Assembly (NCBI RefSeq): GCF_036321535.1
Contig: NC_087444.1
Coordinates: forward strand, 79,670,001-79,734,000
Length of the DNA: 64,000 nucleotides
Reading direction: 5' to 3'
Origin: Camelus dromedarius
Lineage: Eukaryota
Shown here: positions 43,060-64,000 of the stretch, piece by piece
Layout: each line of letters begins with the position of its first letter
Numbering within the stretch: position 1 is the first letter of the stretch
Position numbers and translations under genes: made by a program
The notes under the pieces: model-generated
The model's database searches: none
The model's input: only the letters and a program-made list of their open reading frames with translations
What the model was told of the DNA's origin: nothing

Positions 43060-43400
43060 ACTTTCATTAAACAAATATTCAAGACATCACTTTCTAATAA
43101 TTGTACTATGTTTTATATCATCTGTGTCCTACAGGTTATTGTAGCTACTGGACACTTATGGTGGAATTAGAATGACATACCTCTGGCAACTCTTCCTAAT
43201 TCCACGTTTAGTGATACCATGTTGGCAGTTTGAAACTGGCCACAGTGGGCATATTTACATCAGGGAAATTAGAAAACAGTGCAAACCAGGACTTAAACTT
43301 GTATTACTGGAAGTCCACACTTAAGAATATGGGACTAATACGGATTAAACAAAGTATATTGTGTATGTGATAATTACGTTGTATACAGCATGCAAAGTAA
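43060..43400 (-). mobile_element. MER63-like fragment (mirrored at ~63870-64000)
   Basis: Same core as 38960-39100 in reverse complement. Confidence 0.5.
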
Positions 43401-45700
43401 CTGTGGGGAAAAAATGAGCTATTTATTTGCTAATGAAAAAGGAAATGAGCAAGAGATATGAACAGACATTTTACCAAGAAGATACACAGATGGCAAAAAA
43501 ACAAAAAAAAAAGTTCAACCTCATGAATCCTTAGGCAGATGTAATTAAAACTACCGCTTATTAAATTCAACAATTAAGAAATTCAAAAGATTGATCATAT
43601 TAACTATTGGCAAGAATGTAGAAGCATTTTACATACTCCTGGTGTGTATGTAAATGCAAACAAACATTTTATGTCACAGTCTGGCAGTTTTATAAGTTAA
43701 ACTTTCACCTATTCTATGACTTAGGCATTGTACATTAAGTTACTAACACAAGTGAAAAGACATACATACATACATATAGAATTACACGCAAATATTCTAG
43801 CACCTTTATTTACAACAGCCAAAACGAAAAAACTTAAATTGCCCATAACCAGGTGAATGGATAAACAAAAAATATAGAAAAGACTCTACTCATCAATAAA
43901 AAGAATGAACTATTTAGATAAGGATCACAGAAGAATCTCAGAATATTTATAAACCGTGGATGAAACCAGAAAACAAAAAGCACAGTAAACATTTTATGAA
44001 TAAAATCTTACCAAATTCTAGAAAATACAAAATAATCTATTATAAATGAAAGTAAATCAGGGGTGGTCTGGAGGTCCAGGGAGAGGAAGGACAGATAAAA
44101 TGACATGAGGTAAATGGGGATGATAGACATGTTCACTGTGATTATTTTGAGGTTTCATAGATTTATATGTAGGTAAAAATTTTTACACTTTAAATAGATA
44201 CAAGATATTGCATCTTGACTATATCTGAATAAAAATTTACAAAACGGTTCAAAAGAAAAGTCTAGATCTATCACTGTTTTCAGAAAATCAAGTCTGGCAA
44301 TCATATATTAAACTTTTTTTTTTTTTTGAATTGAAGTACAGCTGATTTACAATGTTAGTTTCTGATGTACAGAGTAATTCAAGTATATGTATATGTATGT
44401 GTGTATATACATATACACACATAACTTGCTTTTCTTTTCTAATGACCTGGGAGAAGCAGCCTTGCCTTCGTGGGAGCAAACACTGATGAGCAATGCATCC
44501 CTTCCCCCTGGGTTAGCAGGAATGCTGGCTAGTCACAGACACACTTCTCTGCCTGCTTAGCAATGGCCTTTCCTGAACATTCCAGAGAGACTACAGGAAT
44601 CCACAAAAGCAATAGCGTATTTTCTCTGACAATGACCTCAGCCACAAAAGACACACATGCCTGGAGGTCCTGAGGATTTCTGTGCATCTGTGCACACTGA
44701 TACTGCACAGTCACACTCACTGGAGCATCTGTGGATGCAGTGTGAGCAGGGGCACCCCACCTACTTCCCCGCCATCTCCTCTGCTCCAGTGGCACTTTAC
44801 CAGCATGCTCCCCCTTGGCCCTTCAGTCTTTCAGTGGCACTATCTAGTGAATTCTGGGGACTGGGGATCAGGGCATGTGGTTCTTTTGCAGGGCAACTGC
44901 TGAGCATTACGTGATACTCACCGTGACCAAGAAAAACAATCCATTTTGTTCCAGAAGCACGGGAGGGTGTCACAACTTCCTGGCTCCTCAGGGTGTTCAC
45001 TGAGCTCACAAAGAACCCTGACACCAAGTCCACAAATGAGGACCACAAAACTCGGCAGTCCTTCCTAGGAGACCCTGGGCAACAATGTACTCGGGGCTAA
45101 AGCCAGAAAGAGACCTACATTCTTCAATCACCCTGACGTGTCTGAGGCACACCACACAGGACCCCGTGAAAGCTGTGCAGTCCCTAATGCTGGTAGAGCC
45201 CAGCTGTTTTCAGATCACCACCCAGGAACAGAACCTGAAGGTCAGAGGTGGCTTAAACATTAGTGCCTTTATTATTACAAAATGCAAACAAACATGAGGC
45301 ATGCAGTTGGTGACCTGGAGGCTGGGAAAATTCAAGATAAGTGTCCCCAGAAACTGACATATCCTTGAAAATGCAGTCCTTCCTGGAAAGTCACCAACAG
45401 AATTCAGATCAGGTCCACTGGACCTAAAATGAGCCAGTCCATGCCCTAACCTGGAAATGAGACAGGAATGAGGACCCCACACGGCCTGAGACCACTCTTA
45501 TTTCCCCCTGCAAATGGGGATGGGACAGAAGTCAGCACCCTGAGAATGTTGGGACCTAACTTTTGCACACTGTGTGGACCTGCCAGGTGATAGAGGTGAA
45601 ATGAATCCTGCCAAAGAACTGGCAGTGACATAAATCTGGCAAGGGTCCTGGGCAGGTAAGAAGGTGTAACACAACTCCTGAAAGATTCTCACATACTTGG
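43240..45700. repeat. Outer left arm of the inverted duplication (44545-45700 ~99% to 61505-62662; 43240-44545 ~75-85% to 62662-64000)
   Basis: By-eye alignment of reverse complements. Mirrored ORFs sum to 107206/107207. Confidence 0.85.
43400..44230 (+). mobile_element. Old L1 3' fragment (mirrored at ~63000-63850, minus)
   Basis: Degenerate L1 3'-end motifs shared by both outer arms. Confidence 0.6.
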
Positions 45701-45902
45701 ACTGTAAGGAGAATGTCCCCAACGTGGATTTACAGATATTTTAGATGACTCCCTCAGTTTCTCTCTTCCTGTGTGATTACACTAGAAGGAAACTACATCC
45801 CAGCACATCTAAAGCCTTTCACTAGTGTGAAGTCTCTGCTGTTGAATGAGGTCAAAAATAAAAATAATTGTGGCTGGAGGATTTTTCCCACATCGACTGT
45901 AT

Positions 45903-61122: not shown

Positions 61123-61504
61123 CCTCATGAGTGAAAGGAACATGGGAAATCTTAGCTACAATTGCAACCTCATTAAACACTTAAGTGTTCACACTGGAGA
61201 AAGGCCTTATGAGTGTGGGGCGTGTGGAAAATCCTTTAGCCAAAGTTCTGCCGTCATTCAACACCAAAGAGTTCACACCAGCAAAAAGTCCTGAGTGCAG
61301 TTAATGTGGGAAAAATCCTTCAGCTGCTAATGTGACCTCATTCAATACCAGAGACTTCACACTAGTGGAAAACCTAGATATGCTGGCATCTACAGTTTCC
61401 TGCTAGTGTATTTGCACTGGTGAAGAGAAGTTGGAGTGAGAGCCATCTACCTGAAGTAAAGCCCATACTTCTGAAAATCCACCGTGGGAAGATTCACCTT
61501 AAGG

Positions 61505-64000
61505 TCCAGGTATGTGAGAATCTTTCAGGAGTTGTGTTACACCTTCTTACCTGCCCAGAACCCTTGACAGATTTATGTCACTGCCAGTTCTTTGGCAGAA
61601 TTCATTTCACCTCTATCACCTGGCAGGTCCACACAGTGTGCAAAAGTTAGGTCCCAACATTCTCAGGGTGCTGACTTCTGTCCCATCCCCATTTGCAGGG
61701 GGAAATAAGAGTGGTCTCAGGCCGTGTGGGGTCCTCATTCCTGTCTCATTTCCAGGTTAGGGCATGGACTGGCTCATTTTAGGTCCAGTGGACCTGATCT
61801 GAATTCTGTTGGTGATTTTCCAGGAAGGACTGCATTTTCAAGGATATGTCAGTTTCTGGGGACACTTATCTTGAATTTTCCCAGCCTCCAGGTCACCAAC
61901 TGCATGCCTCATGTTTGTTTGCATTTTGTAATAATAAAGGCACTAATGTTTAAGCCACCTCTGACCTTCAGGTTCTGTTCCTGGGTGGTGAGCTGAAAAC
62001 AGCTGGGCTCTACCAGCATTAGGGACTGCACAGCTTTCACGGGGTCCTGTGTGGTGTGCCTCAGACACGTCAGGGTGATTGAAGAATGTAGGTCTCTTTC
62101 TGGCTTTAGCCCCGAGTACATTGTTGCCCAGGGTCTCCTAGGAAGGACTGCCGAGTTTTGTGGTCCTCATTTGTGGACTTGGTGTCAGGGTTCTTTGTGA
62201 GCTCAGTGAACACCCTGAGGAGCCAGGAAGTTGTGACACCCTCCCGTGCTTCTGGGAACAAAATGGATTGTTTTTCTTGGTCACGGTGAGTATCACGTAA
62301 TGCTCAGCAGTTGCCCTGCAAAAGAACCACATGCCCTGATCCCCAGTCCCCAGAATTCACTAGATAGTGCCACTGAAAGACTGAAGGGCCAAGGGGGAGC
62401 ATGCTGGTAAAGTGCCACTGGAGCAGAGGAGATGGCGGGGAAGTAGGTGGGGTGCCCCTGCTCACACTGCATCCACAGATGCTCCAGTGAGTGTGACTGT
62501 GCAGTATCAGTGTGCACAGATGCACAGAAATCCTCAGGACCTCCAGGCATGTGTGTCTTTTGTGGCTGAGGTCATTGTCAGAGAAAATACGCTATTGCTT
62601 TTGTGGATTCCTGTAGTCTCTCTGGAATGTTCAGGAAAGGCCATTGCTAAGCAGGCAGAGAAACTAGCATAGAGAGAAAGGAGATGCCTTTGTTCACATT
62701 GTGGCTTTGTCACCAGCCAGCATTCCTGCTAACTCAGGGGGAAGGGATCCATTCCTCATCAGTATTTGCTACCACTAAGGCAAGGGTGCTTCTCCAAGGT
62801 CATTAGAAAAGAGAAGCAAGAAAAAAAAGAAAGAATACACACACACACACACACACACAAATATTTGAATTACTCTGCTGTACACCAGAAACTAATGCAG
62901 CATTGTAAATCAACTATAGTTCAATTTTTTAAAAAAAGAAAAGAGGCAGTAAAGGATTGCCAGACCTGATTTTCTGAAGAGTGGGAGATCTAAATTTTTC
63001 TTTCAGACTATTTTGTAGATTATTATTCCAGTAGAGTTGATGTGCAGTATATTAGAAGTGTACAATTTAAATTTTACACCCATGTAAACCCACAAAACCT
63101 TCTCATAATCACAATCATGGACATGTCTCGCCCTCGCAGTTTACCTCAGGCCCTTCCTCTCCCCAGGCTTCCAGGCCATCAATTATTTACCTTCATTTAT
63201 AGGGAATTATTTTGTATTTTCTAGAATTTTATATGATTTTTTTCATAAAATATTTACTTCCGTTTTTTTTTTCTGGTTTCACTTATGGTTCATAATTATT
63301 TTGAGATTCTTCAATGATCCTTATATAAGTAGTCGATTCTTTTTATTGCTGAGTAGTATCTTTTCTATACTTATACCATTCATTTATCCATTTCTCTGGT
63401 TATAAGAATTTGGGTTACTTCCAGTTTTGGCTACTATAAAGGTGCTAGAACATTTGTGTATATTTCTATGTGTACATATGTAATTTCACTTGTGTTAGTA
63501 ACTCGGAGTATAATGCCTGAGTCATAGAATAGGTGAGTGTTTAACCTACAGAACTGCCAAACTGTGACCTAAAAATCAACGTTTGTTTTTACAGACCTTG
63601 CCGGGAGTATGTAAAATGCTTCCACGTACCTGCTAACACTTGGTATGATCAGTCTTTTGAATTTACCCTTTTAGTAAGGAAACAGTTTTAGTTGCATTTC
63701 CTTAAGAATTCATGATATTGAGCATTTTTTTTCATGCGTTTGCCATCTGTATATTTTCTTGGTAAAATGTCTTCATATCTTTTGCCTATTTTTTTATGTG
63801 GTGGCTATTTCCCATTTCATTAAGAAGTAATCAGCTCATTTTTGTTCCTCATTTTTTTTGTGTTATATACAGTGTAATTAGCACAGATGTCATATACTCA
63901 TAAATTTAATCTGCATTAAGTGTAGACTTCCAGTAATACAGTGAAGTCCTGGTTTGTAGTGTTCTCTAATTTTCCTGATATAAGTACTCTCACTGTGGCC
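61505..64000. repeat. Outer right arm of the inverted duplication, running off the window end
   Basis: Homologous to the reverse complement of 43240-45700. Confidence 0.85.
62836..62858. repeat. (CA)n microsatellite
   Basis: tacacacacacacacacacacaca; the homologous site in the left arm (44380-44420) is an interrupted TA/CA tract. Confidence 0.85.

What the first reader, a model, noticed from the sequence alone, without database searches (positions are those of the whole stretch)
43240..64000. Old palindromic ZNF211 gene pair apparently kept identical by arm-to-arm gene conversion
Seen: two head-to-head ZNF211 copies form an inverted duplication of at least 10 kb per arm with four divergence layers. 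The inner 6,753 bp (46584-53336 vs 53779-60531) show one mismatch that I could find, even across intronic L1 and SINE sequence. Next is a divergent finger island, then ~1.15 kb with about 7 differences, then outer flanks at only ~75-85%. Inference: the duplication is old (outer flanks) and the inner parts are repeatedly re-homogenised, as is established for sex-chromosome palindromes. A recent duplication or a simple assembly copy would not give layered divergence. The outcome would be two repressors with the same promoter, KRAB domain and first two fingers but different distal readers.
Basis: partly seen in the sequence, partly recalled or inferred. Interest (0 to 1): 0.88.

Follow-up and report, generated by a model that had tools for sequence, protein, structure and literature searches.

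The report
Camel ZNF211 palindrome homogenised by conversion
Two old, head-to-head zinc-finger repressor genes in a camel genome have had their promoters, KRAB domains, introns and first two fingers overwritten to near-identity by gene conversion, while their remaining DNA-reading fingers stayed as different as they were about 60 million years ago; this is a clean new example of a known process.

Summary
46584-53336 and 53779-60531 are exact reverse complements, apart from one base and mirrored N masks. Next come a ~75% finger island, a 1.15-kb 3' block with 5 substitutions and 1 indel, and ~78% outer flanks.

- **Left copy (A):** it carries the canonical 10-finger ZNF211 array, 93-95% identical in protein to pig and muntjac.
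- **Right copy (B):** it carries a rearranged array shared with a cervid paralogue from reindeer.
- **Trees:** the island groups by paralogue (100/100; 90 of 96 informative quartet sites). The intron, N-terminal coding region and 3' block group by lineage.
- **Direction:** fingers 1-2 of both camel copies are A-type, so B was overwritten there.
- **GC bias:** camel-lineage changes in the inner block run 76 AT-to-GC against 14 the other way. GC there is 8-10 points above the orthologues. This argues for long-running GC-biased conversion.
- **B is probably functional:** its fingers 4-9 show dN/dS of 0.12.

The N runs are probably content masks in an intronic L1.

The scan's first readers noted other near-identical palindromes elsewhere in this genome. 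This is a new member of a known kind.

The parts
42923..44544 (-). Left outer flank, downstream of copy A. Old arm sequence that has not been homogenised.
   Evidence: 77.8% identical and colinear with 62663-64000. 42923-43446 still matches the reindeer B 3' flank.
44545..45696 (-). Left 3' block (3' UTR/downstream of A), homogenised with 61510-62662.
   Evidence: 5 substitutions and 1 indel in 1,152 nt. It groups with camB against the cervid A+B copies, 99/98.
45697..45902 (-). Diverged stretch just after A's stop codon, including the 40-nt transition zone.
   Evidence: About 77% identical to B. 9 differences lie in 45697-45736.
45903..46583 (-). A island: fingers 3-10 of the canonical ZNF211 array plus the stop codon.
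   Evidence: 93-95% aa identity to pig and muntjac ZNF211. 92.9% nt identity to muntjac against 76.5% to camel B. dN/dS 0.05.
45949..46000 (-). Short converted patch inside the island (finger 10 of A), matching 61197-61248 in B's frame-broken tail.
   Evidence: 51 of 52 bases identical inside a ~75% region. Both carry the camel-specific motif [10 protein letters not shown].
46584..53344 (-). Left inner arm. It holds the first part of A's last exon (N-terminal spacer, fingers 1-2; exon starts at 47291), the intron with L1 remnant and N masks, KRAB-A exon 51318-51449, micro-exon 52075-52113 and a CpG island at about 52400-53200.
   Evidence: identity; exons by tblastn of P0121, CpG o/e; KRAB, E=4.8e-23.
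53345..53770 (+). Unique 426-nt spacer. It is the native upstream sequence of the right (+) copy.
   Evidence: Not self-complementary. It is colinear with the upstream region of both muntjac A (L002 9525-10322) and reindeer B (L003 8665-9431) in the + orientation only.
53771..60531 (+). Right inner arm. It holds a CpG island at about 53900-54700, micro-exon 55002-55040, KRAB-A exon 55666-55797, the intron with N masks, and the last exon from 59824 through finger 2.
   Evidence: Fingers 1-2 are A-type: 88.8% to muntjac A against 78% to cervid B.
60532..61122 (+). B island: degenerate finger 3, then six intact fingers in the order ~A6, ~A7, ~A9, ~A9, ~A4, ~A5, then a stop codon.
   Evidence: 85% nt and 86% aa identity to the cervid paralogue, with the same finger order and the same degenerate finger. 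dN/dS 0.12 for fingers 4-9.
61123..61509 (+). Frame-broken remnant of B's last fingers and proximal 3' sequence.
   Evidence: Stops and 1-nt and 2-nt deletions relative to A. The reindeer copy is also decayed here.
61510..62662 (+). Right 3' block, homogenised with 44545-45696.
62663..64000 (+). Right outer flank. It runs off the window.
   Evidence: 78.0% identical to the reindeer B flank and 77.8% to the camel left flank.
50133..50712 (.). Two N runs (50133-50288, 50569-50712) in an intronic L1 ORF2 remnant. They mirror 56827-56982 and 56403-56546.

Best explanation
This is a real autosomal palindrome made of two old paralogues in a Camelus genome. Copy A (minus strand) is the ZNF211 orthologue. 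Copy B (plus strand) is a ZNF211-like paralogue that already existed in the common ancestor of camels and ruminants.

In the camel lineage, arm-to-arm (non-allelic, intrachromosomal) gene conversion has repeatedly overwritten two tracts. The first is the 6.75-kb tract from the palindrome centre to the linker after finger 2. The second, converted less recently, is a 1.15-kb 3' tract.

Conversion stops at the conserved CACACTGGAGAA linker. Beyond it the two finger arrays are rearranged relative to each other (different finger order, plus one unit in B) and about 25% diverged. Heteroduplex cannot extend there, and any tract that did extend would destroy one of two selectively maintained arrays.

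The result is two KRAB repressor genes with identical CpG-island promoters, KRAB-A box, spacer and fingers 1-2, but with different distal fingers.

Shown: the sequence layers, the age of the duplication, the discordant trees, the A-type origin of B's fingers 1-2, the GC-biased substitution pattern, and purifying selection on both arrays.

Inferred: the conversion mechanism itself, its repetition, the reason for the barrier, and that both genes are expressed repressors.
For: Layered identity.

A is canonical ZNF211: its island is 95.5% (muntjac) and 93.3% (pig) identical in protein, and the 10 fingers are colinear.

B's array is shared with the cervid proteins P0030 and P0244 (Rangifer), including the degenerate finger 3.

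Trees: the island splits into an A clade and a B clade, each 100/100. N-terminal coding, 3' block and intron give ((camA,camB),(muntA,cervB)) at 98/95, 99/98 and 84/89. Quartet sites in the island are 90 paralogue, 3 species, 3 other.

Cervid A and B are only 75-90% identical where the camel copies are identical.

Fingers 1-2 of both camel copies match cervid A at 22 sites and cervid B at 5 sites.

GC-biased signature on the camel lineage: AT-to-GC against GC-to-AT is 76:14 in the inner block, 28:20 in the 3' block, 11:14 in the A island, and 0.085 vs 0.143 per site in the outer flank. GC at aligned columns is 0.52-0.54 in camel against 0.42-0.47 in the other species, in the inner block only. 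This matches what is reported for sex-chromosome palindromes (abstracts of PMC8981503 and PMC3723533).

dN/dS is 0.05 for A and 0.12 for B.

Both the A side and the B side are held at 0.94-0.97 of sampled 31-mers in more than 40 public runs under two organism labels.

Another inverted promoter pair in the same window (5023-7662 vs 8201-10269) stays at 78-83%, so near-identity is not a general property of this assembly.
Against: Only one camel genome was compared, so concerted evolution between camelid species was not tested.

The outer flanks give a star-like quartet (29:24:19), so they do not by themselves show a duplication much older than the split.

No inverted partner lies within about 9-10 kb upstream of muntjac A or reindeer B. 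The ancestral duplicated unit also reached at least 330 nt further upstream than the camel left arm does. The tight palindrome may therefore be a later, camel-lineage rearrangement.

A local allelic recombination hotspot could also produce a GC bias.
Confidence: 0.75

Rival explanations
1. One-off recent event. A single large conversion, break-induced-replication or inverted re-duplication event copied about 6.75 kb from one paralogue over the other. It ended in the finger 2/3 linker on one side and at a non-homologous junction (53344/53345) on the other, and so also created the short spacer. There would be no ongoing conversion.
For: The inner block has one mismatch and razor-sharp ends. The left arm lacks at least 330 nt of upstream sequence that both cervid paralogues and the camel right copy retain, so the centre was remodelled at some point. 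The tight palindrome was not seen in cervids.
Against: A single event cannot raise GC by 8-10 points, or give 76:14 AT-to-GC changes on the camel lineage confined to the converted tract. The separate 3' block has an older identity level (0.4% vs 0.015%), and a 52-nt patch sits inside the island. Together these imply at least three separate events. The inner block looks like a mosaic of A-like and B-like stretches.
Confidence: 0.14
2. Assembly artefact. The 5' part of one gene was falsely duplicated in inverted orientation, or the true diverged 5' part of B was replaced during assembly or polishing.
For: Near-perfect inverted repeats are a known failure mode of assemblers (my own knowledge).
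Against: The structure is internal to the window. It has a unique 426-nt spacer that is orthologous to the upstream sequence of the right copy. It has different, orthologue-supported islands and flanks on each side. It has one arm difference and a separate 99.5% block. The camel-lineage GC-biased history in exactly these tracts cannot be produced by an assembler. Both sides are present in more than 40 independent runs. The mirrored N runs are explained as content masks in L1.
Confidence: 0.06
3. Young duplication with a transplanted island. A recent inverted duplication of ZNF211 was followed by replacement of one finger array from a third, old B-type gene elsewhere.
For: Short conversions between zinc-finger paralogues are documented (PMC2604467).
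Against: The outer flanks are only 78% identical. The camel B side aligns to reindeer B as one colinear block of 3.3 kb at 79.7%, running through the island, the 3' block and into the outer flank. No third copy lies in the window.
Confidence: 0.03

Closest known systems
Sex-chromosome palindromes kept more than 99.9% identical by arm-to-arm, GC-biased gene conversion (human Y P1-P8; primate X palindromes; PMC3723533, PMC8981503)
   Same: Inverted arms sit around a unique spacer. Arm identity (99.98%) is far higher than the age of the duplication allows. There is a GC-biased substitution history in the arms. Conversion tracts are multi-kilobase, and identity is kept right up to the spacer.
   Different: This one is small (about 10-kb arms, 6.75 kb homogenised) and presumably autosomal, in the ZNF cluster syntenic with human 19q13.43 (inference from gene content). 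It carries a transcription-factor gene pair, not testis ampliconic genes. Homogenisation is interrupted by a protected island inside the gene.
Mosaic concerted evolution of duplicated genes, where conversion homogenises most of the gene but a functionally distinct segment stays diverged (for example primate red/green opsins, RHD/RHCE; cited from my own knowledge)
   Same: Tree discordance along one gene: flanks group by species and the functional segment groups by paralogue. There is purifying selection on both versions of the protected segment.
   Different: Here the protected segment is a tandem zinc-finger array whose internal rearrangement also gives a structural barrier to heteroduplex. 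The paralogues are inverted and head to head.
Gene conversion among KRAB/poly-zinc-finger paralogues (Emerson & Thomas 2009, PMC2604467)
   Same: The same gene family, with conversion between clustered paralogues detected by sequence.
   Different: That paper reports short converted regions, which it removed as a nuisance before selection tests. Here the converted tract is 6.75 kb, covers the promoter, KRAB box and two fingers, and leaves the rest of the array untouched.

Membership tests
ZNF211 orthologue (KRAB C2H2 zinc-finger gene) | KRAB-A box encoded upstream of the finger exon | tested here: met
   Pfam KRAB, E=4.8e-23, full profile 1-42, for 55666-55797 and its mirror 51318-51449.
ZNF211 orthologue (KRAB C2H2 zinc-finger gene) | Finger array colinear with ZNF211 of other mammals, finger by finger | tested here: met
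   Copy A: 10 fingers in the same order as pig, muntjac, ferret and primates, with island aa identity of 89-95%. The tree places it in the A clade, 100/100.
ZNF211 orthologue (KRAB C2H2 zinc-finger gene) | The same array test applied to copy B | tested here: not met
   B's fingers 3 onward are 67-78% identical to ZNF211 arrays but 86% to the cervid ZNF211-like paralogue, and their order is rearranged. B is a paralogue, not ZNF211 proper.
Palindrome maintained by arm-to-arm gene conversion | Inverted arms around a unique spacer, with arm identity above 99.9% | tested here: met
   1 mismatch in about 6,450 compared bases; 426-nt non-palindromic spacer.
Palindrome maintained by arm-to-arm gene conversion | The duplication is older than arm identity implies (orthologous duplicates in another lineage; discordant trees) | tested here: met
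   The B-type array is shared with cervids. The island groups by paralogue and the flanks by lineage.
Palindrome maintained by arm-to-arm gene conversion | GC-biased substitution history confined to the converted arms | tested here: met
   AT-to-GC against GC-to-AT is 76:14 in the inner block, against 11:14 in the A island and an AT-biased outer flank. GC is 8-10 points higher only in the inner block.
Palindrome maintained by arm-to-arm gene conversion | Arms identical within each of several related species but different between them | not testable with these tools
   No other camelid locus could be fetched. The protein searches returned only a truncated C. bactrianus model.
Palindrome maintained by arm-to-arm gene conversion | Physical confirmation of both arms by spanning reads or two-fold depth | not testable with these tools
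Only 31-mer presence for both outer sides is available.
False inverted duplication (assembly artefact) | Arms identical along their whole length, with no orthologue-supported unique spacer or distinct flanks | tested here: not met
   Divergence is layered. The spacer is orthologous to cervid upstream sequence. The A and B islands each have their own orthologue.

The most novel reading that the evidence does not exclude
The identity of the regulatory and effector module (twin CpG-island promoters, KRAB-A, spacer, fingers 1-2) would not be a neutral by-product. It would be selectively favoured, so that two repressors with different distal readers are co-regulated and share an anchoring sub-site. 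The conversion boundary at the finger 2/3 linker would be held there by selection on both arrays. In camels, conversion has already changed B's reading head by replacing its ancestral finger 2, which cervid B still has.
Probability: 0.15. Interest if true: 0.65.

Novelty: new member of a known kind. Interest (0 to 1): 0.5.

Why it matters
This is a compact, well-delimited natural example of modular concerted evolution in the largest mammalian transcription-factor family. The boundary is exact to the base, the donor type is known for part of the tract, and there is an unconverted comparison in deer.

It shows that conversion can rewrite part of a KRAB zinc-finger protein's DNA-reading head (fingers 1-2 of B) while selection and array rearrangement shield the rest.

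There is also a practical point. Gene annotation and orthology calls for ZNF211 and ZNF211-like genes in camelids will be misled by the chimeric history. Short-read mapping will not separate the two 5' halves.

Tried and rejected
- **Exact-product look-ups** of the camel A and B long ORFs, in both the GTG-start and the first-ATG versions, found nothing in other assemblies. P0121 is not on record either.
- **The third protein search**, aimed at more B-type orthologues, was swamped by generic zinc-finger proteins.
- **"Outer flank is just a shared transposon" was rejected.** It has no other copy in the window and is colinear with the cervid flanks.
- **"N runs are assembly gaps that break continuity" was rejected.** They mirror exactly, sit in L1 ORF2-like sequence as the window's other N runs do, and fit the reindeer spacing. 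I did not look up or fill their letters.
- **"B is a dead pseudogene" was rejected.** Fingers 4-9 have dN/dS of 0.12 against reindeer, although finger 3 is degenerate and the tail is frame-broken in both lineages.
- **The direction of conversion stays unresolved outside fingers 1-2.** Matches to cervid B against cervid A are 94:66 in the intron, 35:36 in the N-terminal coding region and 98:67 in the 3' block. Cervid A and B have themselves exchanged sequence.
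Full report
**1. Observation**

A self-comparison places both arms on the single diagonal i+j=107115.
- Inner arms: 46584-53336 and 53779-60531 differ at one base (53067 G against the complement of 54048), outside four N runs. The arms continue to 53344/53771 with two further mismatches.
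- Spacer: 53345-53770 (426 nt) shows no self-complementarity.
- Island: going outward, identity drops within one base to 70-80%. This covers A 46583 down to about 45697 and B 60532 up to about 61509, with an extra 84 nt in B.
- 3' block: identity returns to 99.5% in 44545-45696 vs 61510-62662, with 5 substitutions and 1 indel. Nine more differences sit in a 40-nt transition zone.
- Outer flanks: identity falls to 77.8% in colinear flanks that reach the window end on the right. On the left they reach at least 42923, as judged by homology to the reindeer locus.

**2. The N runs**

- 50133-50288 mirrors 56827-56982 (156 nt each), and 50569-50712 mirrors 56403-56546 (144 nt each). The flanks stay on the same diagonal.
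- They lie in an open L1 ORF2-like frame that continues in phase across the 156-nt run. The window's three other N runs also have L1-type flanks.
- Spacing between alignable anchors on either side agrees with the reindeer locus: 156 vs 137 nt and 180 vs 176 nt.

I read them as length-preserving content masks in an old intronic L1. They touch no exon. I did not look up their letters.

**3. What the genes are**

Each arm carries the following:
- a CpG island (GC up to 0.80, o/e about 1);
- a 39-nt micro-exon;
- a KRAB-A exon (Pfam KRAB, E=4.8e-23);
- one large exon with the spacer region and the C2H2 array.

A Camelus bactrianus protein model (P0121, "ZNF211-like") is 100% identical over the 200-residue non-finger region, so the window is from Camelus.

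Copy A (minus strand, ORF 45903-47291) has ten fingers. They are colinear with ZNF211 of pig, muntjac, ferret and primates. The island is 95.5% identical in protein to muntjac and 93.3% to pig.

Copy B (plus strand, 59824-61122) shares fingers 1-2 with A. It then has a degenerate finger, followed by six intact fingers whose best matches in A are fingers 6, 7, 9, 9, 4 and 5. After those come a stop codon and a frame-broken tail.

**4. Age of the duplication**

B's odd array is not a camel peculiarity.
- A protein from a metagenome contig (P0030, locus L001) and its 90% cluster mate from Svalbard reindeer (P0244, locus L003) have the same finger order and the same degenerate third finger. They are 86% identical to camel B over the island.
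- At the DNA level, camel B aligns to reindeer B as one 3.3-kb block at 79.7%, running through the island, the 3' block and into the outer flank. Camel A aligns likewise to muntjac ZNF211 (L002) at 80.2%.
- In a six-sequence alignment with ferret ZNF211 (L004) as outgroup, island identity is 92.9% for camel A vs muntjac A and 85% for camel B vs cervid B, but 75-77% between types.
- Informative quartet sites in the island are 90 for paralogue grouping, 3 for species grouping and 3 for the third pattern. The ML tree gives both clades 100/100.

The two genes therefore already existed when camels and ruminants split.
- Synonymous divergence between A and B in matched fingers is 0.39-0.52, only moderately above the camel-cervid orthologous value of 0.33-0.37.
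- The outer flanks give a star-like quartet (29:24:19).

So the duplication, or the last homogenisation of the flanks, lies not long before that split.

**5. Homogenisation in the camel**

Where the camel copies are identical, the cervid A and B copies are much less alike:

| Region | Cervid A vs B identity |
|---|---|
| Intron | 77-79% |
| N-terminal coding | 86% |
| Fingers 1-2 | 82% |
| 3' block | 82.5% |
| KRAB region | 90.6% |

Trees for the intron, the N-terminal coding region and the 3' block give ((camel A, camel B),(muntjac A, cervid B)) with support of 84/89, 98/95 and 99/98. This is the opposite of the island topology. It also indicates older exchange between A and B in the ruminant lineage.

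In fingers 1-2, both camel copies are A-type. They are 88.8% identical to muntjac A against 78% to cervid B, and match A at 22 diagnostic sites against 5 for B. B's ancestral finger 2, still present in deer, was therefore overwritten.

The tract ends exactly at the linker sequence CACACTGGAGAA, which all six sequences share. After it, B continues with its own degenerate finger.

A 52-nt patch inside the island (45949-46000 vs 61197-61248, 51 of 52 identical) carries a camel-specific motif shared by A's finger 10 and B's dead tail. It is a further, separate small conversion.

**6. Repeated or single event?**

I polarised camel-lineage changes on sites where cervid A, cervid B and ferret agree.

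| Region | AT-to-GC : GC-to-AT | Per-site rates |
|---|---|---|
| Inner block (40:9 intron, 29:5 N-terminal coding, 7:0 fingers 1-2) | 76:14 | 0.10-0.14 vs 0-0.04 |
| 3' block | 28:20 | 0.080 vs 0.077 |
| A island | 11:14 | 0.032 vs 0.049 |
| Outer flanks | 99:65 | 0.085 vs 0.143 |

At aligned columns, camel GC is 0.52-0.54 in the inner block, against 0.42-0.47 in the deer and ferret sequences. There is no such excess in the island or the outer flank.

GC-biased conversion is the documented behaviour of sex-chromosome palindromes (abstracts of PMC8981503 and PMC3723533). A single recent copy event could not shift composition like this.

With a typical mammalian neutral rate (my assumption, about 1-2e-9 per site per year), the residual arm differences give rough dates. 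The inner block (0.015%) was last swept within about 1e5 years. The 3' block (0.43%) was last swept of the order of a million years ago.

**7. The centre**

The spacer is colinear with the upstream region of the plus-strand copy in both cervid loci. Cervid A/B paralogy reaches about 330 nt into what is unique spacer in the camel.
- The camel left arm has therefore lost its innermost part, either by an asymmetric central deletion or by a re-formation of the junction.
- No inverted partner lies within 9-10 kb upstream of muntjac A or reindeer B.

The tight head-to-head arrangement may thus be specific to the camel lineage. This leaves room for a rearrangement event in the history, but it does not change the conversion reading.

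**8. Is it an artefact?**

I could not obtain read evidence. Exact-product look-ups in other assemblies found nothing.

Several points argue against an artefact:
- The structure is internal to the window.
- The unique spacer is supported by orthologous sequence.
- Each side has its own island and flank with its own orthologue.
- There is one arm difference, plus a separate 99.5% block.
- The lineage-specific GC history sits exactly in the converted tracts.
- Both outer sides are present at 0.94-0.97 of sampled words in more than 40 public runs.
- Another inverted promoter pair in the same window stays at 78-83%.

I put the artefact reading at about 6%.

**9. Function**

dN/dS is 0.05 for A's island against muntjac, and 0.12 for B's fingers 4-9 against reindeer. 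Both arrays have been under purifying selection since the split.

The sequence therefore supports two KRAB repressors that share their promoter, KRAB box, spacer and fingers 1-2 but differ in their distal fingers. Expression and repression were not tested.

**10. Comparison and novelty**

The mechanism matches sex-chromosome palindromes and classic mosaic concerted evolution. Conversion between zinc-finger paralogues has been reported, but only as short tracts (PMC2604467). Full-text searches found no description of this locus.

First-reader notes from this scan list other near-identical palindromes elsewhere in this genome (IFITM, TAAR, IFNL, MAGE, not checked by me).

Verdict: real, correctly read by the first stage, and a new member of a known kind. 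It is of moderate interest because of its base-exact boundary and the unconverted comparison in deer.

Noticed in passing
window 5023-7662 vs 8201-10269: A second, older head-to-head inverted pair of promoter-like, GC-rich regions at 78-83% identity. Part of it is also copied at 29582-30859 (80-92%). Unlike the ZNF211 pair, it has not been homogenised.
   Followed up: partly
window 18377-20215 and 35731-37224 (+): Two further KRAB-type zinc-finger exons, 77% identical to each other in DNA and about 55% identical in protein to ZNF211. They look like tandem paralogues with a period of about 17-22 kb.
   Followed up: partly
L002 11432-12980 vs L003 9849-11431: Muntjac ZNF211 (A) and reindeer ZNF211-like (B) are 90.6% identical over 1.6 kb around the KRAB exon, but only 75-86% identical elsewhere. 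This suggests the 5' module was also exchanged between the paralogues in deer, only longer ago.
   Followed up: partly
window 2505-2670, 16740-16889, 21028-21158: The window's other N runs also have L1 ORF2-type flanks. This fits masking by sequence content rather than assembly gaps.
   Followed up: partly
P0121 residues 290-307: The public C. bactrianus 'ZNF211-like' model follows the shared sequence through finger 2. It then ends in a short stretch (…[16 protein letters not shown]) that matches neither island. It is probably a mis-spliced model caused by the chimeric locus.
   Followed up: no
window 55002-55040 / 52075-52113: The first 13 residues of P0121 map to a 39-nt micro-exon in both arms, with 12 of 13 identical. 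This fits the earlier first-reader note that a micro-exon supplies the start codon.
   Followed up: partly
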